A stretch of DNA of 64,000 bases from Macrostomum lignano (Eukaryota): the NCBI GenBank assembly GCA_002269645.1, contig NIVC01003085.1, forward strand, positions 56,492 to 120,491. Reading direction: 5' to 3'. The translations under genes and the position numbers were made by a program. How positions within the stretch are numbered: position 1 is the stretch's first letter; every line of letters begins with the position of its first letter. Shown piece by piece: positions 479 through 61,999 of this stretch. The notes below the pieces were generated by a model, which was not told the origin of the DNA, searched no databases, and saw nothing but the letters and a program-made list of their open reading frames with translations.

Positions 479-3400
479 CCAATAGCAACAGCAACAGTCG
501 CGGCCTCCAGTGTCGCAGCAGCAGCAGGCGATGCCTTTCGGGCTGCACAGTACCGCCACCACTGCCGCCGTCAGTGCCGCACTGTGCATGCAGTTCGCAC
601 AGTTGCTATGCACAGACTCCCGGCAGGCTACGGCTTCAGCATCAGCGGCCAGCGTCCGTGCGTTGTTAGCGCAGTTGTGCCTGGCAGCGCCGCGCAGCAC
701 GCCGGCCTGAAACCTGGCGATTACCTGCTGGGCGTCAATGGCCAGCCAGTTGATGGGGCTGAGCACGAGCGAGTGGCTGCATTGATTGGCGCCAGCGGCG
801 ACTCTCTGGCGCTTCAGGTTGTGTCAGTGAGTTGGTCAACTTTTGTAGGGAACGTAGAGGTTTTGATAATTCAGAGGGTCTAGGGAATTTAGCTTTAGCT
901 GTTGGAATTTTGATGGTGTGAGCAATTTAAAGGGTGTAGGTAATTTAAAGCGTGTGGGGAATTCAAAGCGTGTGGGTGATTTAAAGGGTGTGGGGAATTT
1001 AAAGCGTGTGGAGAATTAAAGCGTGTGGGGAGTTTAAATAGGTATAGGGATGGGGAATTTAAGGATGTGGGGGAATTTAAAGCGTGTGGGGAGTTTAAAG
1101 GGGTAAAGGGGTGGGGAATTTAAAGGATGTGGGGAATTTATTGGGTGTGGGGAATTTGTAGGGTGTGGGGAATTTATAGGGTGTAGGGAAATTAAAGGCT
1201 GTGACTTAAAAAAAAATCAATGGCGGAACGGATTTTAGGGGCTGGGGGGAAGCTTCTAAGACGTAGGAAGCTTTTGGGCATTTGGGACTTTTTGAGAAAG
1301 TTGATGGCATTGCAATATTTCGAGCTCAGTCTGAGGTTCAAAACAAGGCTCAGTCTGAGGTTCGAAGCCCACTGTTACTTTGGACTTGGCGGCCCTCATC
1401 AATATGACAACAGAATTCGTGAGCACTACTCAGAGCGAGAACTCATTCTTAATCTGTGATGCCGAGCAGGCCGAGCCCAGCCTCCTAGGCGCCTGCTCAG
1501 ACAATGATGAAGCGGAAATGCCGCATCAAAAGCTGGCACAGCAACAGGCGCCGCCTCCGCCACCACCGCGGCATCAGCACTGCGGCGCCATCGGGCCGGA
1601 GCAGCGCTACGAAGACGCCGCCGCTGCCACTGCCCCGGCTCTGTCGGGCGAGCTGGCGGGCCGCTGGCTGGTCATCCACGTCGCCAGCCTGCAGCTGCCG
1701 GTCCCGGCGCCCGCCGACCGGCTGCGCGTCGTTCGCTCGGCGATCGCCAGCGCCCGCGCCGCGGCCCGCCTGCAGCCGTCGTCGCCCTCGGCCTCGCCGT
1801 CCTCACTATCGCCGTCGTCTTCGACCTCGTCGACGAAGCCGACGCCGACTCCAGCAACTTCCGCGGCGGGCCAGCCGACCCTTCTGGAGGTGACGCCGCG
1901 CTCTGTCAGCCTCGCCGACGCCCGAGGCCGCTCGCTGCTCAGCCTGCCAGCAGACAGTCTGGCCTTCGTCTGCGCCTACAACGAGGACGCCCGCTACTTT
2001 GCTCTCCTCACCGTCGCTGGCGCGGTGCACATCTTCCGGGTCAGCGGCCGCCTAGCCGATCATCGGCGCCGCGGTCACGCTCGATGGACGGCGGCGTTCG
2101 GATTGAACTGCCAGCCGGACGAGTCCGCTGGCTGCTGCACCCAGCTGCCTCAGGTGGCGGCTCCCATCGTGCACCGGCTGGTGCGCCTGTTCGCCGACAA
2201 GGAGGCCGCGGCGCCGCCCAGTCTGAGCTATCCGACCCCGCCGCCGTCTGGCCCGCCGGCTCTCAATCGACAGCAGCGCCAGCTTCGTCGACCGTCGGTT
2301 CCGATACACGTCGCCGACTCTTCATCGGGCACCCTGACTGGCCTGGCGGCATCGTTGAACTCAACAGTCAGGACGCTGGCCTCTGGAGAAGTTGTTCAAG
2401 GGCAGCAGCAAAAGACGGATGTCGCTCCGTCGACGCGATGGACAACTGGACTCAGTGCGCTCTCTTGTGAGGTACAGATTTACGCTCGTACCTGTTATTA
2501 TATTGGTGACTGGGATTCCCCTAACTGGATTCCTCTAGCTGGGATTCTCCTAGCTATAATTCCCCTAATTGGATTCCCCGAACTGGGATTTTCCTAGCAG
2601 GGATTTCCCTAACTGGATTCCCCTAGCTGGGATTCTCCTAGCTGATATTCTCCTAGCTGGGATTCCCCTAGCTGGATTCCTCTAGCTGGATTCCCCTAGC
2701 TGGGATTCTCCTAACTGGAATTCCCCTAACTGAATTCCTCTAGCTGGGATTCCCCTAGCTGGGATTCCCCTAGCTGGAATTCCCCTAGCTGGGATTCTCC
2801 TAACAGGATTCTCCTAACAGGATTCTCCTATCTGGGATTCCCCTAATTGGATTCCACTGTCAGGAATTTTCCTAACTGTGATTTCACTGACTGGGATTCT
2901 ATTTAACTGGAGCTCCACTGACTTGAACTCCACTGAAGAAACCAAATCTTAGCTGACAGAATGATATGAGGTAGTGTTATTATTGTAAAGCGGAGAAAAC
3001 TGCCGCTTTTTTTGCGCATCAGGCAGCAAGTGTCCAATGCCGAAGAGCTAGTTTCCCTCATAGCTGACCTTTTAACTAATATGTCTCACTTAAAAAGCAA
3101 TTACAAATTAACGCTAGGTAACTAATTAAGTAAAGCCAGCGGCCTCGCCTCTCCATACCGCAGAATCTGGCCAGCAGCGCCTCCTCCGATGACGCCGAAT
3201 CGCCGCCAATCGTTGCCGACAATCAGCGCCGACGCAGCGGCGGCGACTTCGGCGTCGGTACGGGAATCGGCGCCAAATTCGTCCCGGCGCCGCCGCCGCT
3301 GCTGCGCCGCCGGCCCCAATCGGCGATGGCGTTCGGCTCCGGCGTCGTTGATGCGCCCGACGCCATCGACGATACAGCCGCCACTGGCGGTCCCTCCGAC

Positions 3401-13410: not shown

Positions 13411-13479
13411 AGGTTTACAATTTATTTCTGTTTCACTTTGACTTTACTAAGGAGCCTGTTAAAGTTCTTGATGAACTTT

Positions 13480-31672: not shown

Positions 31673-34600
31673 GGGACTCTCGAAATCGGGCTTCCGACTA
31701 GAAGGGGCTTTGCACTTACCTGCCAACTAGTGTCTTTTTGCTGTCAATCTCGAAGTCATAGCCGATGATAAGGGACACTGCTGGGACTAGATCGCATTGG
31801 CCATGCAGGTACAAAGGGGACTTGTGCAGGGGATTCTTGCAGTGGCGAGACTATGGGGTAGCTACATATGTACTATTACATTGCTAAATACGAAGAATTG
31901 TACTTTTGGCCATCAACGCGCCAACTAGCCTCTCCTAGCGCTGATGATAGGCTAACTCGAACCTCAGAGACCGCATGATTGATTACCCGAGCCGCTTGGC
32001 TAACCTAGAGTGCACAAAGTACATCTCTGGCGCCGATTCTGCACTACTGGCAGTTTCGCTAACTGATTCGATAGATTGGTCGACTGAGAACTGCCTTGCC
32101 ATTGGTCCACTGTGACCGGCGCCTACTAGCTTAGCCACTCATCTGAGCCATCGGCGAACAAAGAAATGAAACCGATAAAAATAACTGTCAGATTTAACCT
32201 TCTCCTTAGATCACTTCACACCTCAGATTAAATTGGAGCTTCAGACTACTAGCAGTATTATTGAATGGTTTCTGCCTCAGTAACAGCACTACTGAACAAA
32301 ATGAGCAAAAGTGTGCGCCTAATCCAGCTACTGAAACGGGGGACAGATAAGGAATCACCCAATCAAGCAAGTCTAGGTAGCCTCTCACCCAACCAATCAG
32401 AAACTCAACAGCCGGAGACCAGGTTATCCACAGTGACCGAATCGGCTTAGTGCTTCGCAGCTGTAGACCCGGGATGATGCTGATGTCACAACCTTCGCAG
32501 ATAGCTAGCAGGTGACGCTCTTAACTTTGATGTTCACTGCTGATGACCGGGGGAATTCGTCCTTGATGATGATGGGGGGAGTCGCAATCCGGGGATCAAG
32601 AAATGACGGTCGGGCCAGGGAGAGAACAAGTTCCTAAAGTCAAGTCTCCAAAAAGGGTTGAAAAGTTAGTCCGAGCGGGCCAAAAACACCGGTTTAAATA
32701 GCCGCCAACTGGACCGCAGTTTGTTATAATGGAACACGTCGATTCTGATTGGCTAAGTCGATTTTTTAAATTTTCTTTTAAATTTTCTTCTTTGAGAGCG
32801 TCAAATTTTCTGATTGGCTGAGCTTGTTGCCACCCAAAGTCACGTGACCGGGAGATCCTATCAGTTCCCTCGGGGTCGTAAAAATATGACAGGTGCGGCC
32901 ATAAATCAATCAAAATCGCAACAAAATGATTTATGAATTTTCGCGTAGAATTGACAAAAATTAATGAAAAAATATACATTAGAAAGCTCTTATTAAGTAG
33001 AAAGTGAAGGTATTAAAGAGAAATCGCTAGTCGCTAATCCCAACGTACTTTTACGCATAGGGGTAAAACGCATAGCTGTCAAAGCTGTGTCACACGCTTG
33101 AGTGAACACGAACAATAGGCCCTGACCTCATAAATCTTGATGGCCTGTCAAAATGATGAGAAAAAAGCTACCGCCCGCATCCTCTCAGACCATCTGGCGC
33201 CAGCCCCAGCACTGAGTGAGGCGCAGGTGGCTGTCAAACTAGCTCAGACGCAATTATTTATGACCCAAAAGCAGCAAAAAACCGCGCCTATGTTTATTAT
33301 TACTACAAGTATGGCAGATTAATATAGCTACAAAAGTCCTACTAGTATGAATTCTAGAAAAATTACAAGAGGAAGAAAAACGCCCATAGCCTGCTGTTAG
33401 TAGGCTAGCAAGTTTGCATGGAACCCATGTGCGAGCGTGAAATTTGGAAAAAAGTGCGTCCTCATCAATTTTCAATTCCAATCTTTTTCGCGCACACTCA
33501 GGTTTTGTCGCTGGGAGTGGCTTGGGTGGATCGGTTTTGCACCGTCCCTGATTCCACTATTGGGTTGGCGGTGTCTTAGTCCATGCTTGGGTTAGTAGCA
33601 TCCAATAAGGCTTCACCACGCCTTGAGTCCTGGTCCCAATCTGGGCCTCTCGGGCTTCGGCCCCTGGCAGTATGACCCCTACTATACTATAGCGGCCCTT
33701 CTTTGGGCTGATCCGCGGGTTGCCCCAGCTTGCCTCCTCGTTTAACAACAGCAAGAAACGATCAAAAAGAAAGGAAAGGGCACTGCACCCGTGTCTCGTC
33801 ATTCTATGTCTTAAATTTACTTTTATTGCTATGATAAAAAATTAATTTTTATCAAGCCGCTTAAGAAGTCTGTTGAGTTGCTAAAATATGTTTTACTGAC
33901 CTAATTGCTTATTTATTATACAGCGATAACCTGAGGAACATTTCAATTTCAAGTATATAATTTTCTCAAGAAACAAAGAAAATGTTAAAATTGATATTTT
34001 CGCTTAGACTGAATTAGCATTTTCATTATATAGTATTATACTCCTATGTAATTAGCAAAGTGCATAAAATGTGGAAAGTATGCGCAATTAGATTCTCATA
34101 TTAGTATTCTTAAATGTTTTTCGAGAATATGATTGAGACATGTTTGAACAAGTAATGATTTTTTAAAAATCTTTTTTTGTTGGGTCATATCAAGGAAAAG
34201 ATAGGAATTCCATGGATATAGTTTAATCTTACTTCTACTAATATTTTTTTCAATTCATCAATATCAGATTTTCATATATATTTTCAGATTTTTGCTTTCT
34301 GCAGTAATCTGGTATATTAGAAAGTTATTTGTTTACATTAGGCTTTTATATAATTAATGTAGGTTTTGATTAATAGATGAATTAGGCAAATTATATAAAT
34401 ATTTTTGTAAGAATATACATTAATAAATTGATAAGTTATTTTATTTTATAACCAGTTGAGGTTTAATAAATTAGGTATGAGTATGAATTAACAATTTATT
34501 AAAGAATTATAAGATATGACTCATCCCTCTCTTCAGTCAACAACACTAATGCATTTAAAATCTTTATTAATCATAATTTTTGATACCCTACTACTAGTAG

Positions 34601-34696
34601 AAGTACATAAAAAGGCAATTTCAATAATAAAAATAATGTCTATGTAAAATGTTAATTTTATGAATTAGTTCTGCAACAACAGCATCATGTCTTCAG

Positions 34697-37600
34697 GCTT
34701 CCAACCAGCCATTTGATGCCCTGATAATTGGCGCTGGAATTTCCGGCCTGGTGGCAGCTGTCCGCCTGCTGGAGTCGCGGCCAGCGGCCCGCCTGTTAGT
34801 GCTGGAGGCCAAGGACCGGGTGGGCGGCCGGACCCTGAGCACCGCCTTGCCTAGCAGTGGCAGCGGCGGCACAGACTGGTGGGACCTGGGCGGGCAGTGG
34901 GTCGGCGACTGCCAGCCTCGGGTGTGCCAGCTGGCCGAGGAACTGGGCATCGGCCGCTACCAGCAGTTCAATGAGGTGCTACTTGGCTGTTCGCATTTGA
35001 GAATTCTTCTAATCTTTGTCTTTGATAATCTAGGATGATGAGATCTCAGATGTGTCAAATTGGAGGAAATGGCGCTAATGAGATCTCAGATGTGTCAAAT
35101 TGGAGGAAATGGCGCTAATGAGATCTCAGATGTGTCAAATTGGAGGAAATGGCGCTAATGAGATCTCAGATGTGTCAAATTGGAGGAAATGGCGCTAATG
35201 AGATCTCAGATGTGTCAAATTGGAGGAAATGGCGCTAATGAGATCTCAGATGTGTCAAATTGGAGGAAATGGCGCTAATGAGATCTCAGATGTGTCAAAT
35301 TGGAGGAAATGGCGCTAATGAGATCTCAGATGTGTCAAATTGGAGGAAATGGCGCTAATGAGATCTCAGATGTGTCAAATTGGAGGAAATGGCGCTAATG
35401 AGATCTCAGATGTGTCAAATTGGAGGAAATGGCGCTAATGAGATCTCAGATGTGTCAAATTGGAGGAAATGGCGCTAATGAGATCTCAGATGTGTCAAAT
35501 TGGAGGAAATGGCGCTAATGAGATCTCAGATGTGTCAAATTGGAGGAAATGGCGCTAATGAGATCTCAAAGGTGTCAAATTGGAGTAAATAGCGCTAATG
35601 AGATCTCTGATGTTTCAAATTGGAGGAAATGGCGCTAATGAGATCTCAGAGGCCGCATTGAATCAACAAGCCAATCCCAACAACCAACCGCAGGGCCGCA
35701 AGCTGCTCCAGCTAGCGGACGGCAGGGTGACAAATTACTCGGGTGAGCTGCCCAGCATTGGCCTGCTGGGCAACCTGGACTTGGCGCAGGCAATCTACCG
35801 GTTCGAGTCCCGACTGTCGGTGTCAGGCAGGTCGTCGCTTGTGCCCGAAGCTGCTGGGAGCGAGCCGGCATCGTTGCCGGAGTTGCCGTCGGATCAGGCT
35901 AGTGAAGAGTTCGCCTTGAGCACACTGAGAATGAGAGAGTTTACCTTATTTGGTGTTCAAAAGAAGTATTGGGTTCATGATTCATTGTTTACACTCTAAA
36001 TATATAGTAACATATCTGGTATTCATAGTTTTAAATTTACTGCGAGTAAAAAATTAAACTAAAAAATTAACTGCTCAAGTGTCTGTGACCAAGTGTCTGT
36101 GACCAAGTGTCTGTGACCAAGTGTCTGTGACCAAGTGTATGTGACAAGTGTCTGTGACAAAGTGTCTGTGACCAAGTGTCTGTGACCAAGTGTCTGTGAC
36201 CAAGTGTCTGTGACCAAGTGTCTGTGACCAAGTGTCTGTGACCAAGTGTCTGTGACCAAGTGTCTGTGACCAAGTGTCTGTGACCAAGTGTCTGTGACCA
36301 AGTGTCTGTGACCAAGTGTCTGTGACCAAGTGTCTGTGACCAAGTGTCTGTGACCAAGTGTCTGTTGCTAAAAATTGACAAATTTGACTTTTCTTTGCAA
36401 AATCCTGTTGTAATTTGCATTCAATATGCTCATAGGTAAGTAGTCTAAGCACAATGTATGCTTTAAAATTAGATGTTTACACGAAATCTATCCATTAGAT
36501 AACAATTCTATTTAAAAAATGCAACGCCAAATGCCAGGCCATACTGGACGGCCGCACAATGAGCACGGAGGCCGCCGGCCTGTGCTGGACGCGCAACGTC
36601 CGCTCGCTGCTGGATTCGACGATTCGGATCCTGTTCGGCCAGGAGCCTGCGGCTGTTTCGGCGCTTTACGCGGCCAGAATGTTCCACTCGGTTGGCGACT
36701 TCGAGCGACTGATCAGCGACATGCCTGACGGTGCTCAGGTGCGCTTGTGCGGCTGAAGGAGCTGGTGTCTGAGCTGAGATCTCCTACTGAGAGAGCTGGT
36801 GTCTGAGCTGAGATCTCCTACTGAGAGAGCTGGTGTCTGAGCTGAGATCTCCTACTGAGAGAGCTGGTGTCTGAGCTGAGATTTCCTACTGAGAGAGCTG
36901 GTGTCTGAGCTGAGATCTCCTACTGAGAGAGCTGGTGTCTGAGCTGAGATCTCCTACTGAGAGAGCTGGTGTCTGAGCTGAGATCTCCTACTGAGAGAGC
37001 TGGTGTCTGAGCTGAGATCTCCTACTGAGAGAGCTGGTGTCTGAGCTGAGATCTCCTACTGAGAGAGCTGGTGTCTGAGCTGAGATCTCCTACTGAGAGA
37101 GCTGGTGTCTGAGCTGAGATCTCCTACTGAGAGAGCTGGTGTCTGAGCTGAGATCTCCTACTGAGAGAGCTGGTGTCTGAGCTGAGATCTCCTACTGAGA
37201 GAGCTGGTGTCTGAGCTGAGATCTCCTACTGAGAGAGCTGGTGTCTGAGCTGAGATCTCCTACTGAGAGAGCTGGTGTCTGAGCTGAGATCTCCTACTGA
37301 GAGAGCTGGTGTCTGAGCTGAGATCTCCTACTGAGAGAGCTGGTGTCTGAGCTGAGATCTCCTACTGAGAGAGCTGGTGTCTGAGCTGAGATCTCCTACT
37401 GAGAGAGCTGGTGTCTGAGCTGAGATCTCCTACTGAGAGAGCTGGTGTCTGAGCTGAGATCTCCTACTGAGAGAGCTGGTGTCTGAGCTGAGATCTCCTA
37501 CTGAGAGAGCTGGTGTCTGAGCTGAGATCTCCTACTGAGAGAGCTGGTGTCTGAGCTGAGATCTCCTACTGAGAGAGCTGGTGTCTGAGCTGAGATCTCC

Positions 37601-40600
37601 TACTGAGAGAGCTGGTGTCTGAGCTGAGATCTCCTACTGAGAGAGCTGGTGTCTGAGCTGAGATCTCCTACTGAGAGAGCTGGTGTCTGAGCTGAGATCT
37701 CCTACTGAGAGAGCTGGTGTCTGAGCTGAGATTTCCTACTGAGAGAGCTGGTGTCTGAGCTGAGATCTCCTACTGAGAGAGCTGGTGTCTGAGCTGAGAT
37801 CTCCTACTGAGAGAGCTGGTATCTGAGCTGAGATCTCCTAATGAGAGAGCTGGTGTCTGAGCTGAGATCTCCTACTGAGAGAGCTGGTGTCTGAGCTGAG
37901 ATCTCCTACTGAGAGAGCTGGTGTCTGAGCTGAGATCTCCTACTGAGAGAGCTGGTGTCTGAGCTGAGATCTCCTACTGAGAGAGCTGGTGTCTGAGCTG
38001 AGATCTCCTACTGAGAGAGCTGGTGTCTGAGCTGAGATCTCCTACTGAGAGAGCTGGTGTCTGAGCTGAGATCTCCTACTGAGAGAGCTGGTGTCTGAGC
38101 TGAGATCTCCTACTGAGAGAGCTGGTGTCTGAGCTGAGATCTCCTACTGAGAGAGCTGGTGTCTGAGCTGAGATCTCCTACTGAGAGAGCTGGTGTCTGA
38201 GCTGAGATCTCCTAATGAGAGAGCTGGTGTCTGAGCTGAGATCTCCTACTGAGAGAGCTGGTGTCTGAGCTGAGATCTCCTAATGAGAGAGCTGGTGTCT
38301 GAGCTGAGATCTCCTAATGAGAGAGCTGGCATCTGAGCTGAGATCTCCTACTGAGAGAGCTGGTGTCTGAGCTGAGATCTCCTACTGAGAGAGCTGGTGT
38401 CTGAGCTGAGATCTCCTACTGAGAGAGCTGGTGTCTGAGCTGAGATCTCCTACTGAGAGAGCTGGTGTCTGAGCTGAGATCTCCTACTGAGAGAGCTGGT
38501 GTCTGAGCTGAGATCTCCTACTGAGAGAGCTGGTGTCTGAGCTGAGATCTCCTAATGAGAGAGCTGGTGTCTGAGCTGAGATCTCCTAATGAGAGAGCTG
38601 GTGTCTGAGCTGAGATCTCCTACTGAGAGAGCTGGTGTCTGAGCTGAGATCTCCTACTGAGAGAGCTGGTGTCTGAGCTGAGATCTCCTACTGAGAGAGC
38701 TGGTGTCTGAGCTGAGATCTCCTACTGAGAGAGCTGGTGTCTGAGCTGAGATCTCCTACTGAGAGAGCTGGTGTCTGAGCTGAGATCTCCTACTGAGAGA
38801 GCTGGTGTCTGAGCTGAGATCTCCTACTGAGAGAGCTGGTGTCTGAGCTGAGATCTCCTACTGAGAGAGCTGGTGTCTGAGCTGAGATCTCCTACTGAGA
38901 GAGCTGGTGTCTGAGCTGAGATCTCCTACTGAGAGAGCTGGTGTCTGAGCTGAGATCTCCTACTGAGAGAGCTGGTGTCTGAGCTGAGATCTCCTACTGA
39001 GAGAGCTGGTGTCTGAGCTGAGATCTCATCGAGAATGCTGGTGTCTGAGCTGAGATCTCATCGAGAATGCTGATGTCTGAGCTGAGATCTCATCGAGAAG
39101 GCATGTGTCTGAGCTGAGATCTCATCGAGAATGCTGGTGTCTGAGCTGAGATCTCATCGAGAATGCTGATGTCTGAGCTGAGATCTCATCGAGAAGGCAT
39201 GTGTCTGAGCTGAGATCTCATCGGGAATGCTGGTGTCTGTGGGGCAGTGTACATCTGCCTCCCTCTCTCTCTCCCTCGCTCACTTGGTCCAGCGCTATCA
39301 CTGCCCCGTACAAGTACGTACAGCCAACCACTCACTTCAATAATTGATTTAGCTCGTATTACGCAACTAGTCATAGCCAAATATAAGCCGGCCCTGCTAA
39401 GTGCAAGCGGCCCTTGAGTTATTCTTCATGCCTGCCTAGCACCATATCGCGGCATTAACTTTTCTACATTGGCGTCGCAAGCCATCGGACAAACAAGTGC
39501 CATGGCAAACTTTATTTCTCTGCCACCGCCCGAGCCATTCAATCCATCCAGTGACTCTCAAAACTCAAGCAAGCAGTGGGCGGCCTGGTCAAGCAGATTC
39601 GATGACTTCATCGCAGCGTCTGGAATCTCAGAAGAAAAACAAAAGTGCAAGCTGCTCTCCTACACGGGGGCAGAGAGCTAGCCGAGATCATCAGAGAAGT
39701 GCAGGCCAATCACGAAGACACGAAAGGATCGCTGGAGAGGCTTCTGGCCGAACTGACCAACTATTTCAACGACCGAAAAAACCTGGTCTTCGCACGGTAT
39801 CAGTTTCGGCAGTGCACACAACAGCTGGGAGAGACCATAGACAACTGGTACGCTCGGATGAAAGCATCCGCTGACACCTGCGACTTCGGAGAACTTCGAG
39901 ATTCCATCATTCGTGATCAGTTGGTCGCCACCTGCCTCTCTGACGCACTTCGTCGCCGACTACTGCGAGAATCTGACATTTCGCTCAGCGACGCTCTCAA
40001 GTGTGCGAGAGCCTACGAAGCTTCAGAAGCGCAAGCAACCGCAATCGAGCAATCGAAGGACTCGACCGTCGCTGCTATCAGCCAGCAAGGCACCACGCAA
40101 CGGCAACGGCATCGGCAACAACAGCCAAACAGAAGAAGTTATTTGGACCGCCCACCACAATCAACAAGTCAATCCCTCACCTGCTACAGATGCGGCGAAT
40201 CCGGCCACAGCAACTGTGAAGCTGCTAGAGGCAAAACTTGCAGCAACTGCGGAAAACCGAACCATTTGGCAAAGGCGTGCCTCGGGGCAACGCAGGCGCG
40301 GCTCGATATTCGAAAGTGAACTCTGTTTCAACTGAAGAAGCACAAATTCTCTACACCGACGAGAGCATTACTGAGGGCGTCTTCACTCTGCCCGCTGACC
40401 AGGTGCAGTACCCAGAAGATGTGACAGTGCGAGTCCTGGTTGGAGGTGAGCCTCTAGATATGATGGTAGACAGCGGGGCCAGCTGCAACATCATGAGCGA
40501 TGAGACATTCAAGAAGCTCCACGGAGTGCAACTTCTCCATACCAACCGCGTCATCAAGGCGTACGGCGCATCTGCCCCGCTCAACATCAAAGGAATGTCG

Positions 40601-43600
40601 CATCTTGTAATCACCGTGGGCAAGAACTGCTGCAAGACGCCGTTCTACGTGATGGAAGGGCGGGGTGCCACATTACTCGGGCGCCAGGCCGCCTTTGAAC
40701 TCGGTTTGCTCGAAATTCGCCGGCCGAAGCAGCTCGCCGACGTCAGCGCTGTCGAAGCAAAACCTTCCGAATGATCCACAACTGAGGACAGTCTTGCAGA
40801 AGCACAAGAATTTCTTCACAGGGCTCGGCTGCGTCAAAGGCGTCGAGGTATCAGTGCGACTCCAAGAAGATGCCATCCCGGCCTGCCATCCACCAGCCCG
40901 AGTTCCGGTCCACCTAAAGACAGCAGTGGAAAAAGAGCTGCAGGGTTTACTGGACTTAGACGTCATCGAGCCGGTAACCGGTCCCACACCGTGGGTGTCT
41001 CGCATGGTCGTTGTACCGAAGTCGTCTGGAGGCGTCAGAATATGCCAAGACCTTCGAGACCTCAACAAATTTGTGATCCCGGAAAAGCAAGCCATACCCA
41101 CCTTGGACGAGGTCACAGAAGAGATGGCCGGAGCAACCCTATTCAGCGAGCTGGACATCTGCAAAGCATTCTACCAAATACCGGTGGATGAAGAAAGCCG
41201 ACACTTGTTCACATTCAGCACCCCCATCGGATTGATGCGGCTAAAGCGACTGAGCATGGGGTTTACAAGTGCCTCTGAAATCTTGCAGCGGATCATGTCA
41301 GGAGTGCTCAGCGGCCTCCCCGGAGTCCGGTGGATCCATGATGACGTCATAATATATGCGGACAGTATGCAGCAGCACAATCAGCGCCTTGACGACTGCC
41401 TCACTAGGCTCTCAGAGTGTGGACTCACGGTCAACCCGGAAAAATGCAAGTTCGCCAAAAGTTCCATCAGCTTCCTCGGCGTTACATTATCGGCCAAGGG
41501 CATTTCGGCGCCAGCTGAGAAAATCCAAGCAGTCCAGGATTTTCGACCACCAACCAACGCATCCGAGACTCGGTCCTTCCTGGGACTGGCGAATTATTTG
41601 TCAAAGTTCATCCCGAGCTTCGCCGACCTGACAGCCCCACTGCGCGAGCTAACCAAGAAGTGCAAGCGCTGGGAATGGACGACTCAGCATGCAGAGGCCT
41701 TCAACGCGTTGAAAAGCGCTATCAGCAAGCCAGAAACGCTGGCCTTCTTTGATTGCAATCGGTCCACAGAACTTGTCGTCGATGCTTCACCAATCGGACT
41801 GGGCGCAATTCTCAGCCAGAAGCAACCGAATGGCACCGTCAGGCCCGTCGCCTACGCCAGTCGAACTCTGACTCCAGTTGAGCAGCGCTACTCACAAATA
41901 GAGCGCGAGGCTTTGGCCGTAAAATTCGGCTGCCTTAAGTTCGACTTCTACTTGGCTGGCAATTCGAATTTTACCATCGTCACAGATCACAAGCCTCTGA
42001 TCCCGCTTTTTAAGCCGGGTTCACGGCCGCCGCCGAGAATTGAGCGAATGGCGCTCCGCATCCAACATCTTCAGTTCAAGCTCGAATACCGGCCCGGCGC
42101 ATCGAACCCGTCGGACCTTCTAAGCCGACAGCCGATGCCAACAGATCTGTCTCGTGCTATCGGTGAAACTCTAGACGCCGCCTACATCAACGCAGTGGTC
42201 AAAAGTGCTGTCCCCCGCGGTCTATCTCTAAAAGACTTCAAAACAGCTACCGGAAGCGACATGGACATCCAGGCTGCCATCACCGGCATCAAGACGCAGC
42301 ATTGGAACCAGCACAGCAGTACACAGCGAACCTTCAAAGGAATCGAGCACGAGCTATCAGAAAGCGACGGAGTTCTACTCCGCGGTGACTTGATCGTCGT
42401 GCCTTCATCGCTGCGGCGGCAGGTCTTAGCACTGGCACACACTGGACATCTCAGCGCCGAGCGGACACTCCAGCGGCTGCAGACCAAGGTGTGGTGGCCA
42501 GGGGTTCGAGCCGACTGCGAGGCATTCGTTCAAGCTTGTCTGCCATGTCAGGCCACATCCCACGCTACCTACCATGCGCCGCTGAGGCCTACAAAGATCC
42601 CGGATGGGGCCTGGCTCCTGCTAGGAATGGACTTCTATGGGCCCATCCAAGGACAGATGCTTCTCGTCACGACGGACCTGTTTTCTAAATATCCTGAAAT
42701 CAACTACGTCAGCTCAACATCAGCAGCAACAGTTATTCCTCACATACGACAGCTCTTCGCCCGCCACGGGGTCCCGCTGGAGCTGATCACAGACAACGGG
42801 CCGCCTTTCAGCTCGCACGAGTTCCGCGCTTTCCTGACCTCGTTCGGCGTCAAACACCGCCTCATCTGCCCGCTGCATCCTGAAGCCAACGGTGCCACCG
42901 AACGCGTCAATCGCTCAGTGAACAAAGTTGTCAGAGCCGCTATCGCTGAAGGTCGCTGCTGGAAAGAGGCGCTGGATGAGTGGCTCCTCGCATTCCAGGT
43001 GACGCCGCACAGAGCCACAGGCAAAGCGCCGGCTGAACTTCTGATGGGTCGCAGAGTTAACGACGTCATTCCATCGGTCAGACCATCACGGCGAGCCAGC
43101 TGGTCTACCAGTGACATCAAGAACCGGCACAACCGCTACAACGACAACATGAAGGCCGGCTTCGACAAGACCAAGCGGGTTCGACAGCACAGCATCCGGC
43201 CGGGTGACCGAGTCCTTCGACGGCAGAACAAGTCCAAGCTGCACACCCCGTTCGAACTGGAACCCTGGGTGGTCGAGTCCGTCAAAGGCGACACATTCAC
43301 TCTGCAACGGCAAGGACAGTCGTGCATGCGTCACCTGGTGCACATCCGGCCGGTTTCACAGCCGCTGCATCCGCCTGAAGCAGCGGCCGGCCAGCCGCCA
43401 GCCAGCGCGGGTCCCGCTGAAGCAGACGACGGCGAGTCAATCGCAATGCGCAGTCACTCGAGAAGAGCGCGAGACGCAGTGATTAACTACAAACTGTGAT
43501 TTAAAAAGAATTGACTGTCTAATATCATTAACTGTCGCCGCTGCCAATCGTTTTTTTGCGAATTCGTAGTCAGTTCAATATTTTTGTTTTAATGTCCCCA

Positions 43601-45807
43601 TTACGAATATCTCTTTTTGTCTCAACGCGTGCCAAGACTAATATTCGCGCATTTTGTAATACTATGTGTTTGCTGCATTTTTACTATCCACAGCTTTTTC
43701 TCGCTCGTACTTACTTCGGCATTGCAATTTTTCGAATTTCTCTTTTGTCGTTCAAGCAGAAACTGCGTTTCTTTTCCGTTTGGGGAGAAATGTGGGGCAG
43801 TGTACATCTGCCTCCCTCTCTCTCTCCCTCGCTCACTTGGTCCAGCGCTATCACTGCCCCGTACAAGTACGTACAGCCAACCACTCACTTCAATAATTGA
43901 TTTAGCTCGTATTACGCAACTAGTCATAGCCAAATATAAGCCGGCCCTGCTAAGTGCAAGCGGCCCTTGAGTTATTCTTCATGCCTGCCTAGCACCATAT
44001 CGCGGCATTAACTTTTCTACAGTGTCTGAGCTGAGATCTCATCGAGAAGGCATGTGTCTGAGCTGAAATCTCATCGAGAAGGCAGGTGTCTGAGCTGAGA
44101 TCTCATCGAGAAGGCATGTGTCTGAGCTGAGATCTCATCGAGAATGCTGGTGTCTGAGCTGAGATCTCATCGAGAAGGCATGTGTCTGAGCTGAAATCTC
44201 ATCGAGAAGGCAGGTGTCTGAGCTGAGATCTCATCGAGAATGCTGGTGTCTGAGCTGAGATCTCATCGAGAAGGCATGTGTCTGAGCTGAGATCTCATCG
44301 GGAATGCTGGTGTCTGAGCTGAGATCTCATCGAGAAGGCATGTGTCTGAGCTGAGATCTCATCGGGAATGCTGGTGTCTGAGCTGAGATCTCATCGAGAA
44401 GGCAGGTGTCTGAGCTGAGATCTCAGTCAGATCGGATCAAATCTGTCCGTCTGCCTTTCTGTCTTCGTGCCCTACGAGCAGTCTTGGCCCGCTGTCCTCA
44501 GGGCTACCGACTGGTGGGCGGCGCGCAGAGTCTGAGCCTCCGCCTGGCCGACCGGCTGGGCCCCGGCCGGCTGCGGCTCGGCAGCCCCGTGGCCGGCGTT
44601 GAAGAGGTCGAGGCTTCGTCATCGGCGTCAGCCGATGCGCCAGACGGAGGCGCCCGCCTGGCCGTCCGCCTGAGCAGCGGAGACCGCCTGCTGGCCCGCC
44701 TGGTCATCGCTGCCGTGCCGCCCAACCAGCTGGCCCGTCTGGCCCTGCCCTCCTCCGAGCCGGCCGCCGTCAGCCTGCAGACGGCCGTCGGTGCCGCGGT
44801 GCCGTCTCATTACGCCAAGTTTATCGTAACCTACTCGGAGGCCTGGTGGCGACGGCTCGGCTACTCTGGCGAGCTGTTCAGCTGCGACCCGCTGTCCCCC
44901 ATTGTGACCGGATTCGACGGTTGGTGGCCTGCAGGACGGAATTACCTGCGGGTTCACTTCCGGTTCTCTAATCCGATTAACTTCCGGTTCTCTCATCCGA
45001 TTAACTTCCGGTTCTCTCATCCGATTAACTTCCGGTTCTCTAATCCGATTAACTTCCGGTTCTCTCATCCGATTAACTTCCGGTTCTCTCATCCGATTAA
45101 CTTCCGGTTCTCTCATCCGATTAACTTCCGGTTCTCTCATCCGATTAACTTCCGGTTCTCTAATCCGATTAACTTCCGGTTCTCTTATCCAATTCACTTC
45201 CGGTTCTCTAATCCGATTAACTTCCGGTTCTCTAATGTTTTAATTTTTCATTCTTATCCTGGTTCCCATGGAATTGGCATCCGGTTCCCATCGAATTCAC
45301 ATCCGGTTTCCATCGAATTCACATCCAGTTCCCATCGAGTTCACATTTGGTTCCCATCGAATTCACATCCGATTCTCAACACCAGGCACCACGGACACCG
45401 GATCAGCTGCTCTGGTGCTACTATCGGCCGGTCGGCCCTCTCAGGACCTCGAGTGCCTGCCTACGCCGGAGGCCCGTCGCGAGGCGGTTCTCCGCCATCT
45501 GGCCAAATTCTTCCCTCATGATTCAGCCTCCGGCCTCGCTGCCGACTGCCTCCACTTCGCCGAGAAGTTCTGGCGCGCCGAGCCATTCAACGGCGGCTGC
45601 CCATCTGACGTGGCGCCCTGTGGATTCGGCCGGTTCCACCTGGCCGACCTGGCCGCGGCCACTGCTGGTCTGTGCGACGGCCGTCTGCTGTTTGCCGGCA
45701 CCGAGTTCGCGCGCCGCTGGGTCGGCTACATGGAAGGCGCCATTGAGAGCGGCGAGCGGGCGGCCACCGCCGCGGCGACCAAGCTGGAAGATGGCCAGGA
45801 CGGCTGA
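34697..45807 (+). CDS. MAO: Flavin-containing monoamine oxidase-like protein, multi-exon
   Basis: Exons 34697-34975 (FDALIIGAGISGLVAA...VLEAKDRVGGRT...DLGGQWVG), 35694-35897, 36538-36738, 44502-44919 (GGAQSLS...LGSPV...YAKFIVTYSEAWWR) and 45386-45807 (EKFW..EPFNGGC...RLLFAGTE...GYMEGAIESGERAA). Phases 0,0,0,1 are consistent. No ATG lies in frame in the first exon; a possible cis exon is 33140-33226. Confidence 0.88.
35038..35650. repeat. 40-bp tandem satellite (~15 copies) filling the first MAO intron
   Basis: AGATCTCAGATGTGTCAAATTGGAGGAAATGGCGCTAATG repeated almost identically. Confidence 0.95.
36075..36365. repeat. 14-bp minisatellite (CCAAGTGTCTGTGA) in a MAO intron
   Basis: Seen directly. 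Confidence 0.95.
36760..39237. repeat. 34-bp satellite (GAGAGAGCTGGTGTCTGAGCTGAGATCTCCTACT), grading into 30-31-bp variants; resumes at 44022-44423
   Basis: Homogeneous tandem array interrupted by the LTR element. Confidence 0.95.
39238..44021 (+). mobile_element. Full-length Ty3/Gypsy LTR retrotransposon (Mag-like), recent insertion
   Basis: 231-bp LTRs at 39238-39468 and 43791-44021 (TG...CA, no difference seen by eye); 5-bp TSD GTGTC; PBS-like TGGCGTCGC after the 5' LTR; PPT GGGGAGAAA before the 3' LTR. Confidence 0.95.
39502..43499 (+). CDS. Gag-Pol polyprotein of the LTR element (gag with two CCHC knuckles, protease, RT, RNase H, integrase), with three 1-bp indels
   Basis: CYRCGESGH...CSNCGKPNHLAKAC; VDSGASCN; WIHDDVII; VDASPIGLGAIL; TDHKPL; H-x3-H...C-x2-C; GMDFYGP, TDNGPPF, NGATER. 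Frame changes occur near 39665, 40290 and 40760. The pol frame is open from ~40760 to 43499. Confidence 0.88.
44955..45375. repeat. 24-bp (TTCCGGTTCTCTCATCCGATTAAC) and ~22-bp minisatellites in the last MAO intron
   Basis: Seen directly. Confidence 0.9.
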
Positions 45808-47538: not shown

Positions 47539-47539
<1 letters not shown>

Positions 47540-55444: not shown

Positions 55445-55732
55445 ATGTACAAGCTCGTCTGTCTGTTCGCTCTCGTGGCCTTCGCCGCCGCCGCCTACAC
55501 TCCGGAGCAGAAGAACGAGGTCGTGAACGACATCATTCACGAGGTCGTTCCCGTGATCAGCATCGACACCAACTGCTTGAAGCAGAACGGCATCAGCTCC
55601 GTGAACTGCCTGATCTCCAACCTGGCGACCTGCTACTTCGCCCACGGCACCAACATCAGCCAGCTGGCCGGCTGCCTGGCCAACAAGTGCGGCGGCAGCG
55701 CCATCCAGATTCTCAGCTGCATCAAGCTGTAA
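55445..55732 (+). CDS. Small secreted six-Cys protein, copy C
   Basis: 95-aa ORF MYKLVCLF...CLKQNGISSVNC...LATC...SCIKL. Confidence 0.88.
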   Translation: MYKLVCLFALVAFAAAAYTPEQKNEVVNDIIHEVVPVISIDTNCLKQNGISSVNCLISNLATCYFAHGTNISQLAGCLANKCGGSAIQILSCIKL

Positions 55733-59146: not shown

Positions 59147-59434
59147 ATGTACAACGTCGTCTGCCTGTTCGCTCTCGTGGCCTTCGCCGCCGCCGCCTAC
59201 ACTCCGGAGCAGAAGAACGAGGTCGTGAACGACATCATTCACGAGGTCGTTCCCGTGCTCAGCATCGACACCAACTGCCTGCTGCAGAACGGCATCGGCT
59301 CCGTGAACTGCCTGATCTCCAACCTGGCCTCCTGCTACTTCGCCCACGGCACCAACATCAGCCAGCTGGCCGGCTGCCTGGCCAACAAGTGCGGCGGCAG
59401 CGCCATCCAGATTCTCAGCTGCATCAAGCTGTAA
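59147..59434 (+). CDS. Small secreted six-Cys protein, copy D
   Basis: 95-aa ORF; 4 nt differ from copy A and 2 nt from copy B. Confidence 0.88.
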   Translation: MYNVVCLFALVAFAAAAYTPEQKNEVVNDIIHEVVPVLSIDTNCLLQNGIGSVNCLISNLASCYFAHGTNISQLAGCLANKCGGSAIQILSCIKL

Positions 59435-59732
59435 ATGCATTTTTCTATCAATGCATAGAAATACAATTTGGTTGCTGAGCGCAATCTGGAACAGTTGAAA
59501 GCGCCAGCTAAAATATTAATTAAACTATCAAAACTCACTGTTTAATTGACTTTATATTTTTATTTTGTCGCACGCGATAGAATTTAAAGTGCAAGTGGGA
59601 ACTCGAACTCGGACACAGGGTTCAAATGCATAAAATTCATGGCTTGTCTTCGACACTTTTTGTTTACTACAAGATTTGCAGTGAATGGCAAAGCGGGACT
59701 ACTTGGCTGACTTATTGATGACAGCTGGCGGC

Positions 59733-61999
59733 TCAATCCTGACAGTCCTGCAGCACGCACAGCCTCGCCCTGCAGTAGGGGCAGCAGCCGTGCAGTCGGT
59801 TGAAGCCCTGCCGAGTGTCCGGCAGGCCGCGCAGCCACTCCACTGCGCAGCTGCGGTGGTAGCGACGCCGGCAGCGCTCGCAAGTGACGCAGTCGGGACC
59901 ATCGGCGGAGCAGTCAGCGTAGCAGATGCCGCAGTCGACATCCTCGGTAGCGGCCTCGACGCCAGCATCGCCCGCCACCGGCTGCTCGGTCTCGACGGCT
60001 GAAGGCTCGGCAAGCAAGGCGGAGCCGCCCAGCAGAGCTCTCAGGTTGGACACAAAGTCCGCGACGTCCGCGCCTGCTTTCCAGGCGGCGGAGTTGGCGG
60101 TCACGGCCACTTCGATGGCCTCGGCAGCCGGACCTGCGGCACTGACGGATGGCAGGGCAGCCGGGCTGGCGTCGGGGTCCAGCCTGATCAGCAGGCTGCT
60201 GGCGCGGCTGCGGGGAGTTGGAGCTGCCTCCGCATCAATATGATGTAGTTTTTGTTTTAGTGCGCGATGGCGGCTATTTAGGGTATTCAGTATCTGAGCA
60301 CACCTGGGGCCGACCTCATGAAGATGGCAGTTGCAATCTTCAACAAAAGGATTTGCCATAGACAAAACAGCCTCTGCTAAATCCGATTGCATGTTGGAGA
60401 TTGGAAGCGGACCTGGACTTCTTGAGCTTTAGGTACATAAAATACTTCCGATTTTTTCGCCAGAGTCTTAGAGCAAAAAACTGCAAAAATTACCTTCAGA
60501 GTTAACAGGAGCTTAATTTGTTAATCTCCTATGTAATTAGTGATAATTTGATATAAGCAGGTTCGGAGAATTTTGTGTTTGAAATTTGAAGTTTTTTTGG
60601 AATCATATCTTTCAACTGTAAAAAATTTCCAAAATTTGATGAAATTATTCTAATAAAAACATTTAGAGGGTTCAAATTTTAACTCCGATAAAAATAGTGT
60701 CTATTCTAATTTAAATATGCTGACTCAGGGTTCGCCACCCGCCCCTTACCTCCCGCTTTTTGATTTGCTGTCGTTCTCTCATTGTTGTGCCGACTAGCCG
60801 TACATTCTTTACTTGTTTACCTATACTAACTTTTACTAATCTGCCTTGTCTCCATTCAAAAGTTAACTACAGCTGCTGATGTCAATTAGTTTTGATAGGA
60901 TTGTCATTTTTTCTTCATGGAGGTGTTTGATGGCTTGCCGAATTTTTTATTTAAGCCCATCCCTCAGTCTCCGAATTTATCTACCTAATCTACAATAGAC
61001 TCCCATGCTTCTGTTGAAGTTTATGTACATAAAATCAATCCCCATGAAGATTCTCCCCACCCTAAAACCCCCCATTCCCTATGCCCCGGTGGTTGGTTTG
61101 AAGCTACGAAAAAACGAAGCTCAAATTTGAAATCAGCACCATCAAAAACCTCTAAAGGAACAAAATTATGATCCTATCAAAACTGCAACAATTTTATACC
61201 TACCTAAAGCTCAAGAAGTCCGCGGAGCTGTGTAGTGCAAAAATGCAAATATTTGATTAAAAACTCAGCTAGAGTCGCCAGTTGCTCAGCAAAAGCCACT
61301 CACTCGGCCAGCAGCACCCGTCGGTGAAGCGAGCGTCTACGCTGGGCCGGCCGCGGCTCAAGCACGACCAGCCGGCTGTCCAGCTGCTCCAGCAGCTCCC
61401 AGTGCGGCAGCAGCGACCGCGACGCCCCGGCGAACCGGTCGAACAGGCGCCGCAGGCTGCCGTCACCGCCACCGCCGCCGGGATCGGAACTGGCAGCTCC
61501 GAGTCGACGAGGCAGAAATTGGGACAGTCGCCAACATCGGCGGCAACGCGAAGCCGGACGCCCTCCGGGCTGATCAGAGTGGCCGAGGCAAAGTCGGGCG
61601 ACACGGACTCGATGCAGCCGAGCCCGACGGTCAGGAGTTCGCGCCCGGCGCGGGCCAACCAGCGCCGATGGCGCAGACGATCGGTCGAAACAGACACCGT
61701 CACGTCCTCGGCCGGCGCGGCAGCCTCTTCACCCGGAGTCATCGGGCGTTGAAGCAGGTCGCGCGCCGTCGCCAGCATTTCGTCGGGGTTTTCTGGTGGC
61801 GCGGCCGCCTCGGCCAGCACTGACCGGCCGGACTCGGCGAAGGCCAGCAGGCCACAGCGGCGCGGCTCCACGGCTAGCAGAAGACGGCCGATATCGGCGC
61901 CGCCGGGATTCGAACTCGGATCGTGATTCGGCTGCTGCTGCTCCGCCGCGCAGGCAGCGGCAGAAGCAGCCAATGAGCAGCTGTGGCGCTGATTGAGGA
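59733..61999 (-). CDS. FANCL: Fanconi anaemia group L E3 ubiquitin ligase (two exons; two apparent 1-bp frameshifts in exon 1)
   Basis: Exon 2 (60207-59733): SLLIRLDP...LP, NSAAW...NLRALL, RING DCGICY...C..C...YHRSCAVEWLRGLPDTRQGFNRLHGCCPYC. Exon 1 (~61999-61304): WLLLPL, GCIESVSPDFASATL, ELPVP, SLRRLFDRF...HWELLEQLDSRLVVLEP...RRVLL. The intron is phase 2 (GTGAGT...CCGCAG). Confidence 0.85.

What the first reader, a model, noticed from the sequence alone, without database searches (positions are those of the whole stretch)
479..61999. Three unrelated genes lack an in-frame ATG but start at a phase-0 acceptor: start codon possibly donated by a spliced leader
Seen: RGS12 (ttgctgCAG|479 PIATAT...; the first in-frame ATG at 608 lies inside the PDZ), MAO (tcttCAG|34697 ASNQPFDALIIGAG; in-frame stop just upstream) and FANCL (ctcttCAG|61999 SSISATAAHWLLLPL) each begin at a pyrimidine-CAG acceptor exactly in frame. 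Established: flatworm spliced leaders end in AUG, which can serve as the initiator Met. Adding Met gives plausible N-termini (M-ASNQPFDALIIGAG; M-SSISATAAHWLLLP, compare human FANCL MAVTEASLLRQCPLLLP). Inference: these genes depend on trans-splicing to be translated. The secreted genes nearby have their own ATG and TATA-like motifs. The acceptors were chosen by eye, so the phase agreement is suggestive only.
Basis: partly seen in the sequence, partly recalled or inferred. Interest (0 to 1): 0.72.

Follow-up and report, generated by a model that had tools for sequence, protein, structure and literature searches.

The report
Flatworm genes probably started by spliced leader
Three conserved genes of the flatworm Macrostomum lignano begin at splice acceptors that would join in frame to the ATG ending the species' spliced leader, a known flatworm way of supplying a start codon; no transcript data could be reached, so it is likely but unproven here.

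Summary
The window is Macrostomum lignano assembly Mlig_3_7, contig NIVC01003085.1. This species' 35-nt spliced leader (SL) ends in ATG, and its trans-splice acceptors fit [T/C]TNCAG (PMC8629364). All three claimed acceptors exist and fit that motif.

RGS12 (CTGCAG|479) and MAO (CTTCAG|34697) are as described. In-frame stops lie 63 and 36 nt upstream, with no in-frame ATG between. The first RGS12 Met lies inside the PDZ. MAO exon 1 has no Met, and its Rossmann fold starts at residue 7.

FANCL is not as described in this window. However, a 98.6%-identical paralogous contig shows that the window lacks two single bases. In the paralog, the frame from the same acceptor runs 211 codons through FANCL. 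Filling the indels gives a 390-aa ORF collinear with vertebrate FANCL. Phase 0 therefore holds for all three genes.

SL use remains an inference. Rivals are:
- upstream cis exons (MAO 33140-33226);
- FANCL's own ATG at 62149;
- a 1-nt assembly deletion that would put RGS12's ATG 531 in frame.

The mechanism is already known (Cheng 2006). These would be new examples only.

The parts
473..478 (+). RGS12 candidate SL/3' splice acceptor CTGCAG (fits [T/C]TNCAG)
   Evidence: motif from PMC8629364. GC content rises from 0.32 (200 nt upstream) to 0.62 (200 nt downstream)
479..826 (+). RGS12-like exon 1 (116 codons, phase 0 at both ends). PDZ runs from about codon 39. Donor is TCA|GTGAGT
   Evidence: PDZ 1.7e-16; 2KV8 RGS12 PDZ 6e-15. 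RGS and RBD exons lie downstream at 3134-3562, 4304-4807 and 5050-5700
416..418 (+). In-frame TAA upstream of the RGS12 acceptor; no in-frame ATG between it and 479
531..533 (+). Out-of-frame ATG in RGS12 exon 1. One missing base between 534 and 592 would bring it into the PDZ frame (rival start). As the sequence stands, it precedes and competes with ATG 608
608..610 (+). First in-frame ATG of RGS12 exon 1, inside PDZ strand beta-1
34691..34696 (+). MAO candidate SL/3' splice acceptor CTTCAG. It is the only [T/C]TNCAG between -150 and +90
34697..34975 (+). Amine-oxidase (MAO-like) exon 1: 93 codons, no Met, GxGxxG Rossmann fold from residue 7
   Evidence: It is the only Rossmann exon in the window
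34661..34663 (+). In-frame TGA 36 nt upstream of the MAO acceptor
34687..34689 (+). Out-of-frame ATG 10 nt upstream of MAO exon 1 (9-codon ORF). It is in frame only in the older ML2-derived protein P0001, which lacks one C
33140..33226 (+). Rival upstream cis exon for MAO: ATG plus 28 codons, ending in phase 0 at the weak donor CAG|GTGGCT
   Evidence: Codon-usage score +6.9, in the top 6% of non-coding ATG-open controls. No Pfam hit
35694..45807 (+). Remaining MAO exons: 35694-35819, 36538-36738, 44502-44919 and 45386-45804, plus the stop. The model gives 481 aa from 34697
   Evidence: Pfam Amino_oxidase covers profile positions 1-441 of 443. The NCBI annotation gives a 506-aa product ending at 45807
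62000..62005 (-). FANCL candidate SL/3' splice acceptor CTTCAG, with 10 of 13 pyrimidines upstream. It is identical in the paralog from -74 to +51
61304..61999 (-). FANCL exon 1. Compared with paralog L003 it lacks one base near 61945 and one near 61483, which splits the ORF over three frames
59733..60207 (-). FANCL exon 2 (rest of UBC-like domain 3, plus RING) with stop; acceptor ccccgCAG|C
   Evidence: (FANCL_C 2e-14, FANCL_d3 4e-7)
61874..61876 (-).
62147..62149 (-). ATG in frame with the acceptor-phase FANCL ORF, 150 nt upstream. It is open down to the acceptor in both copies and is a rival own start

Best explanation
Positions 479, 34697 and 61999(-) are the 5' ends of the first coding exons of three conserved M. 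lignano genes: an RGS12-like gene, an amine oxidase and FANCL. Each is preceded by an acceptor of the species' SL trans-splicing type. The pre-mRNA's 5' outron is removed, taking with it stop codons and out-of-frame ATGs. The 35-nt SL is joined so that its last three bases, AUG, sit directly in front of the first codon. Translation then starts 32 nt from the cap at the SL AUG.

This is most likely for MAO (about 0.6), likely for FANCL (about 0.5) and possible for RGS12 (about 0.35).

Shown here: the acceptors, their motif, their phase, the lack of a usable in-frame ATG in the exons of RGS12 and MAO, and the N-terminal collinearity of MAO and FANCL. Inferred: that the SL is joined at these sites, and that its AUG is used.
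For: Organism and SL. All three sites match [T/C]TNCAG.

Phase 0 with an open frame holds for RGS12 and MAO in the window. It holds for FANCL in paralog L003 over 211 codons, and in the indel-filled 390-aa consensus.

MAO: exon 1 has no Met; the DAO, NAD_binding_8 and Amino_oxidase profiles start at residues 7, 10 and 15. No 5' domain part is therefore missing.

FANCL: with Met added at the acceptor, residues 155-385 align to residues 154-366 of the 373-aa chicken FANCL.

RGS12: homology to the human RGS12 PDZ starts upstream of the first in-frame Met. Out-of-frame ATGs at 531 and 588 precede that Met.

No upstream ATG exon with a GT[GA]AG donor exists within 478 nt (RGS12) or 1.7 kb (MAO). 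GC content jumps exactly at the acceptors.

Literature: 30-39% of genes are trans-spliced, with conserved and stem-cell genes enriched. The SL AUG works as initiator in Schistosoma. The SL ATG is called a start codon in Macrostomum.
Against: No RNA evidence was found. Protein searches returned no transcript-derived protein with an M-prefixed N-terminus. The SL-exon junction was not found in metagenome contigs.

FANCL has an in-frame ATG 150 nt upstream, and the window copy is frame-broken.

For RGS12, codons 1-43 score as non-coding in the PDZ frame: -10 bits, against +11 +/- 7 for coding windows.

The MAO candidate exon 33140-33226 scores as moderately coding-like.

Phase 0 is also the commonest intron phase (from general knowledge), so three out of three is weak evidence.

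The assembly demonstrably drops single bases in GC-rich exons, so phases near the 5' ends are fragile.
Confidence: 0.5

Rival explanations
1. The acceptors are ordinary cis acceptors. Each gene has an upstream first exon with its own ATG that ends in phase 0. For MAO this would be 33140-33226 (MACQNDEKKATARILSDHLAPAPALSEAQ). For RGS12 it would lie left of the window.
For: The MAO candidate exon is ATG-initiated, has 29 codons, ends in phase 0 and scores +6.9 on codon usage (top 6% of controls). Only 478 nt upstream of RGS12 are visible, while the contig continues 56 kb further to the left. The NCBI annotation gives MAO a 506-aa product. That is 25 aa longer than the 481-aa homology model that starts at 34697.
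Against: No upstream candidate has a GT[GA]AG donor. The 29-aa exon added to the natural core gives 510 aa, not 506, and six guessed products were not on record. The MAO and FANCL N-termini are already complete by homology. The 29-aa peptide has no Pfam hit. Using acceptor 44427 gives exactly 506 aa from 34697 with no upstream exon at all.
Confidence: 0.25
2. The genes have their own start codons, which are hidden or misjudged. FANCL would start at ATG 62149, without trans-splicing or in an untrans-spliced fraction. RGS12 would start at ATG 531, because the assembly dropped one base between 534 and 592. MAO would start at ATG 34687, because the assembly carries one extra C.
For: ATG 62149 is in frame and open in both copies. 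The contig lacks 2 bases in 1.17 kb of FANCL coding sequence, and all four coding indels between the two copies are deletions. In RGS12 the frame of ATG 531 scores better than the PDZ frame over 540-590. That start would place Met about 20 residues before VRTV. From memory, this matches human RGS12. P0001 (ML2 assembly) reads MSSGFQQPFDALIIGAG.
Against: The expected number of deletions in a 59-nt interval is about 0.07 (one search counts). The MAO case needs an insertion error, and no insertion errors were seen. P0001 itself carries at least three other frame-breaking deletions within 300 nt. Starting FANCL at 62149 adds 50 residues with no counterpart in vertebrate FANCL, and their codon score is -1.9.
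Confidence: 0.2
3. The loci, FANCL at least, are decaying duplicates in a recently polyploid genome. On this view their start codons do not matter.
For: The FANCL ORF is broken in both copies. The annotation gives only a 219-aa product at the window locus and lists no FANCL_C product within L003. M. lignano is a hidden polyploid (PMC10468722).
Against: Each copy is broken at different sites, and only by 1-nt deletions. Filling them restores one 390-aa ORF with all C-terminal FANCL domains. Exon 2 has no substitutions in 472 nt. The RGS12 and MAO ORFs are intact across all exons examined.
Confidence: 0.05

Closest known systems
Flatworm SL 3'-terminal AUG as initiator methionine (Schistosoma mansoni; Cheng, Cohen, Ndegwa & Davis 2006, J Biol Chem 281:733, as cited in PMC9851317 and PMC12582326)
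   Same: The SL ends in AUG. The acceptor is in phase 0 with the ORF. The recipient exon lacks a usable in-frame AUG, and Met comes from the SL.
   Different: The Schistosoma cases rest on cDNAs and translation assays. Here only genomic sequence supports the idea. The species is a free-living basal flatworm, and the SL is a different 35-nt sequence.
SL trans-splicing in M. lignano (Ustyantsev & Berezikov 2021, PMC8629364; Wudarski et al. 2017, PMC5730564)
   Same: Same organism and same assembly. The acceptor motif [T/C]TNCAG is met at all three sites. The three genes are conserved genes, the class those papers report as preferentially trans-spliced.
   Different: Neither paper's text, as searched, mentions the SL ATG being used as a start codon. 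Their per-gene SL track could not be consulted here.
slORFs: ORFs created by SL addition (slORFfinder, PMC9851317)
   Same: The concept is the same: the SL supplies the start codon of the recipient mRNA's ORF.
   Different: That work supports slORFs in nematodes, Oikopleura and trypanosomes with ribosome footprints and mass spectrometry, mostly from non-AUG codons. No flatworm was analysed.
Macrostomum cliftonense/hystrix annotation note (Wiberg et al. 2023, PMC10468722)
   Same: [quoted passage not shown]
   Different: It is a methodological remark. No genes are named and no test is made.

Membership tests
mRNAs initiated at the SL-donated AUG (Cheng et al. 2006 class) | The organism has an SL RNA whose leader ends in AUG directly before the GU donor | tested here: met
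   The window is M. lignano Mlig_3_7. The SL ...TTGCATG|GTAAG is given in PMC8629364. No SL gene lies in the window itself.
mRNAs initiated at the SL-donated AUG (Cheng et al. 2006 class) | The SL is actually joined to this acceptor in mature mRNA | not testable with these tools
   No RNA-seq or EST data were reachable. Protein collections hold no transcript-derived product of these genes. The junction scan of metagenome contigs was empty.
mRNAs initiated at the SL-donated AUG (Cheng et al. 2006 class) | The acceptor is in phase 0 with the conserved ORF, with no stop between the acceptor and the conserved domain | tested here: met
   Met for RGS12 and MAO in the window. Met for FANCL in paralog L003 and in the consensus. 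Not met in the window copy of FANCL, where a TAG follows after 41 codons.
mRNAs initiated at the SL-donated AUG (Cheng et al. 2006 class) | No other in-frame AUG could give the complete protein | tested here: inconclusive
   MAO: none in exon 1, and an in-frame stop lies at -36. RGS12: the first in-frame ATG cuts into the PDZ, but ATG 531 is one base out of frame. FANCL: the in-frame ATG at 62149 stays in any transcript that is not trans-spliced. Upstream cis exons are not excluded.
mRNAs initiated at the SL-donated AUG (Cheng et al. 2006 class) | Ribosomes initiate at the SL AUG | not testable with these tools
   This needs ribosome profiling, N-terminal proteomics or reporter assays.
M. lignano SL trans-splice acceptor | Motif [T/C]TNCAG directly at the exon start | tested here: met
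   CTGCAG|479, CTTCAG|34697 and CTTCAG|61999(-). The motif is present at 44% of known trans-splice sites. Its background density is 0.0037 per nt.
RGS12/RGS14-type regulator of G-protein signalling | PDZ, RGS and Raf-like RBD domains in that order | tested here: met
   PDZ 1.7e-16. The best PDB hit is the RGS12 PDZ. RGS is split over two exons and RBD scores 3.5e-12. PTB and GoLoco were not detected by Pfam.
FANCL E3 ligase | UBC-like domain 3 plus the FANCL C-terminal RING; collinear with known FANCL | tested here: met
   FANCL_d3 4.4e-7 and FANCL_C 1.7e-14. 6SRI_q 2.6e-20 and 7KZP_L 1.4e-19. The N-terminal ELF domain was not detected by sequence.
Flavin amine oxidase (MAO-like) | N-terminal FAD Rossmann fold plus the full Amino_oxidase domain | tested here: met
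   Amino_oxidase 5.4e-45 over profile positions 1-441 of 443; NAD_binding_8. Whether it is a true monoamine oxidase was not tested, and no C-terminal membrane anchor is evident.

The most novel reading that the evidence does not exclude
Dependence on the SL-donated AUG may be common among conserved M. lignano genes rather than occasional. All three conserved multi-exon genes in this 64-kb window show the pattern. If so, trans-splicing would be obligatory for translating a sizeable part of the conserved proteome, and standard annotation would systematically truncate or mis-start those proteins.
Probability: 0.2. Interest if true: 0.5.

Novelty: new member of a known kind. Interest (0 to 1): 0.3.

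Why it matters
If confirmed, the finding adds named examples of SL-AUG initiation in the one flatworm with stable transgenesis. There it can be tested directly with ATG-less reporters placed behind an outron and acceptor.

It also has a practical side. Gene models for such genes come out 5'-partial or wrongly started. Transgenes built from 'promoter + first ATG' would fail for them.

The side result matters for anyone using Mlig_3_7. GC-rich exons carry single-base deletions that break real ORFs. FANCL is broken at different sites in the two copies.

Tried and rejected
- **Chimeric homolog search.** I queried the RGS12 and FANCL N-termini together.
- **Cleaner chimeric query.** It returned only the window's own 219-aa FANCL product. 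The collection therefore holds no transcript-derived or full-length homologue.
- **Exhaustive HMMER search with the FANCL exon-1 ORF.** There was one spurious hit.
- **Exact-product look-ups for more contig sequence or annotation.** None was on record. I could not read the region left of the window, and I could not see the annotated start of MAO.
- **Six guessed 506-aa MAO products.** None is in the collection.
- **Supplementary tables of two M. lignano transcriptome papers.** They do not list FANCL, RGS12 or MAO.
- **Wasik et al. 2015.** The paper is not held.
- **SL-MAO junction scan of metagenome contigs.** It was empty.
- **Bacterial promoter scan.** It is not meaningful for this organism.
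- **Higher divergence upstream of the FANCL acceptor as a sign of non-coding sequence.** I dropped this argument because the intron diverges no faster than the exon.
- **Acceptor AATCAG|61988 for FANCL.** I considered it because it is in frame with the window's main ORF. I rejected it once the paralog showed that the frame difference is a missing base.


Full report
**Identity of the window.** An exact-product look-up places the window on NCBI assembly GCA_002269645.1 (Macrostomum lignano Mlig_3_7). The contig is NIVC01003085.1, 120,491 nt long. Window position equals record position minus 56,491, and the window's right end is the contig end. A UniRef M. lignano fragment from the older ML2 assembly matches MAO exon 1 apart from indels.

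The premise that this is a flatworm with SL trans-splicing therefore holds.
- M. lignano has one 35-nt SL, CGGTCTCTTACTGCGAAGACTCAATTTATTGCATG, followed by GTAAG.
- Between 30 and 39% of its genes are trans-spliced, with conserved and stem-cell genes over-represented.
- The top motif at trans-acceptors is [T/C]TNCAG (PMC8629364; PMC5730564).
- No SL gene lies in the window.

**RGS12-like gene.** The acceptor ttgctgCAG sits at 476-478 and the exon starts at 479.
- An in-frame TAA lies at 416-418, and there is no in-frame ATG between it and 479.
- Out-of-frame ATGs lie at 531 and 588. The first in-frame ATG is at 608.
- Pfam PDZ covers residues 42-114 of the exon peptide.
- The best PDB hit is the human RGS12 PDZ (2KV8, 6e-15). 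It aligns from residue 39 (VRTVAMHR to VRSVEVAR), so coding in this frame begins upstream of Met44.
- Downstream exons carry RGS and RBD domains.
- Exon 1 ends at 826 (TCA|GTGAGT).

One caveat: codons 1-43 score like non-coding sequence in this frame. They give -10 bits, where coding windows average +11 (sd 7) and non-coding open segments average -5.7. Over 540-590, the frame of ATG 531 scores better.

**Amine oxidase (MAO).** The acceptor tcttCAG sits at 34694-34696 and the exon starts at 34697.
- An in-frame TGA lies at 34661-34663. The ATG at 34687 is out of frame and opens a 9-codon ORF.
- Exon 1 (34697-34975) has no Met. The DAO, NAD_binding_8 and Amino_oxidase profiles start at residues 7, 10 and 15.
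- A five-exon model (34697-34975, 35694-35819, 36538-36738, 44502-44919, 45386-45804) gives 481 aa. It covers Amino_oxidase profile positions 1-441 of 443.
- The gene therefore looks intact, and its N-terminus is complete once a Met is added.
- Intron 3 holds two tandem arrays and a Ty3/gypsy-type retroelement.

**FANCL.** The acceptor ctcttCAG|T at 61999 on the minus strand is real, but the description fails in this window in three ways.
- The frame SSISATAAHWLLLPLP... hits TAG at 61876-61874 after 41 codons.
- The FANCL-like sequence lies in a second frame, and then in a third.
- Upstream in-frame ATGs exist.

The NCBI annotation gives only a 219-aa product here.

A look-up of a neighbouring 117-aa gene brought in a second contig, NIVC01004760.1 (locus L003). 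It is 98.6% identical to the window over 5 kb.
- Within the FANCL exons the two copies differ by four single-base indels. The window lacks a G near 61945 and a C near 61483. L003 lacks an A at the counterparts of window 61336 and of window 60080.
- In L003 the frame from the same CTTCAG acceptor runs 211 codons: SSISATAAHWLLLPLPAPREQQQ...PAQR.
- Filling each gap from the other copy gives exon 1 at 61999-61304, exon 2 at 60207-59736, and one 390-aa ORF.
- That ORF carries FANCL_d3 (4e-7) and FANCL_C (2e-14).
- With Met added, residues 155-385 align to residues 154-366 of the 373-aa chicken FANCL (6SRI_q, 2.6e-20).

The protein is collinear with vertebrate FANCL when it starts at the acceptor. 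Starting at ATG 62149 would add 50 residues with no counterpart and a codon score of -1.9.

**How much the pattern means.** The motif occurs 0.0037 times per nt per strand. An in-phase motif in the permitted interval is expected 0.22 times for RGS12 and 0.07 times for MAO. GC content jumps at each acceptor. However, an acceptor is required whether splicing is cis or trans. Only the phase discriminates, and phase 0 is also the most frequent intron phase (general knowledge). Three out of three is modest evidence.

Stronger arguments are the completeness of the MAO and FANCL N-termini and the lack of good upstream exons. No ATG-initiated, phase-0 candidate within 478 nt (RGS12) or 1.7 kb (MAO) has a GT[GA]AG donor.

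The one serious MAO candidate is 33140-33226. It has the weak donor CAG|GTGGCT but a codon score of +6.9, in the top 6% of controls.

**Attempts to reach transcripts or annotated 5' ends.**
- The protein collections hold no product that contains RGS12 exon 1 or FANCL exon 1, and no FANCL relative at all.
- The annotation lists a 506-aa MAO product with Amino_oxidase and NAD_binding_8, ending at 45807. Its start lies outside every locus I could fetch.
- With acceptor 44427 in place of 44502, the model from 34697 is exactly 506 aa, which would fit a 5'-partial CDS that starts at the acceptor. That sequence and five alternatives are not in the collection.
- The annotated N-terminus therefore remains unknown. 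It is also unexplained why the exon-1 query did not return the annotated product.

**Assembly quality as a rival.** FANCL shows that this contig drops single bases in GC-rich exons: 2 in 1.17 kb, all deletions.
- One such deletion between 534 and 592 would put RGS12's ATG 531 in frame. Met would then sit about 20 residues before VRTV, which from memory matches human RGS12.
- The prior for a deletion in that interval is about 0.07. Codon usage and the Arg/Cys/His-rich look of the present translation favour it, so I give it about 0.25 for RGS12.
- The MAO analogue (ATG 34687, as in P0001) needs an insertion error. It rests on an ML2 protein that has at least three other frame-breaking deletions in 300 nt, so I rate it at about 0.04.

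**Mechanism and verdict.** The most likely picture is as follows. The outron is removed together with its stops and out-of-frame ATGs. The SL is joined at the acceptor. Its terminal AUG, 32 nt from the cap, is the initiator. The next base is G for MAO, which gives a favourable +4 position.

My probability estimates per gene are:

| Gene | SL AUG | Upstream cis exon | Own ATG or other |
|---|---|---|---|
| MAO | about 0.6 | about 0.3 | about 0.1 (own ATG 34687, non-AUG start or other) |
| FANCL | about 0.5 | about 0.15 | about 0.3 for own ATG 62149, rest other |
| RGS12 | about 0.35 | about 0.3 | about 0.25 for ATG 531 with a missing base, rest other |

**Comparison with what is known.** Use of the flatworm SL's 3' AUG as initiator Met is established for Schistosoma mansoni. 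There the AUG is in frame in 28% of trans-spliced transcripts, and more than 40 cDNAs need it (Cheng et al. 2006, as summarised in PMC9851317; also PMC12582326). A Macrostomum genome paper already calls the SL's final ATG a translation start codon (PMC10468722).

In the M. lignano trans-splicing papers, term searches of the text turned up no mention of this use. The finding would therefore add gene-level examples in a new species, which makes it a new member of a known kind.

Its practical value is for gene models and transgene design. It also flags indel errors in Mlig_3_7 coding exons.

Noticed in passing
window 61945, 61483; L003 about 11476 and about 10237: Two 98.6%-identical copies of the FANCL locus each carry different single-base deletions that break the ORF. 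Filling them restores a 390-aa FANCL. These are probably assembly errors in GC-rich exons of Mlig_3_7. Indels outnumber substitutions across the 2.65-kb alignment (16 events against 17 substitutions).
   Followed up: yes
window about 39400-43900 (+), inside MAO intron 3: A Ty3/gypsy-type LTR retroelement with a gag zinc knuckle, protease, RT, RNase H and integrase (Pfam RVT_1 6e-26, rve 6e-13). It is flanked by related 34-nt and 32-nt tandem arrays at 36759-39219 and 44022-44425. The sequence was not assembled or printed.
   Followed up: partly
window 47047-47334 (+), 55445-55732 (+), 59147-59434 (+), 63448-63735 (+), 52586-52302 (-), partial 52048-51836 (-): A family of 95-aa secreted-looking proteins (MYKL.CLFALVAFAAAAYTPEQKNEVVNDIIHEV...). 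They share near-identical 5' flanks and a CATAAAT box about 96 nt upstream. There is no Pfam hit. The annotation aa for the 55379 copy, starting from the ATG inside that box.
   Followed up: partly
window 60392-59733 (-): The annotated FANCL product (219 aa) starts at an ATG inside what homology indicates is the FANCL intron (61303-60208). This fits a longest-ORF call made on a frame-broken transcript model.
   Followed up: partly
window 34697-45807 (+): The annotated MAO product is 506 aa, but the homology-guided model is 481 aa. The alternative acceptor 44427, at the end of a tandem array, adds exactly 25 codons. The exon-1 protein search did not return the annotated product.
   Followed up: partly
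whole window (e.g. 916-1197, 2510-2855, 3571-4194, 13496-15722, 19325-20332, 21646-23241, 29187-29753, 35038-35650, 53060-53725, 62344-62845): Many of the introns and intergenic stretches examined carry a long tandem array with a 10-60-nt unit. Several arrays generate long spurious ORFs, such as the 931-aa ORF at 13459-16254 (-).
   Followed up: no
window 24054-24593 (+); 57934-58374 (+): A reverse-transcriptase fragment (RVT_1 8e-9) and a Tc1/mariner-type transposase HTH fragment (5e-5).
   Followed up: no
window 8769-9086 (+) and 11898-12209 (+): Two similar ORFs 3.1 kb apart (…AADGGQGGGWQQQ.PGEA.Q.L.GVAQV.LATVLPVA…). Their nature is unknown. They may be exons of a duplicated gene or a repeat.
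   Followed up: no
window 34-39 and 53-58 (+): AATAAA motifs lie about 440 nt upstream of the RGS12 acceptor. They could mark the 3' end of an upstream same-strand gene, which would fit an operon-like arrangement. In AT-rich sequence this is weak evidence. The upstream contig sequence could not be fetched.
   Followed up: no
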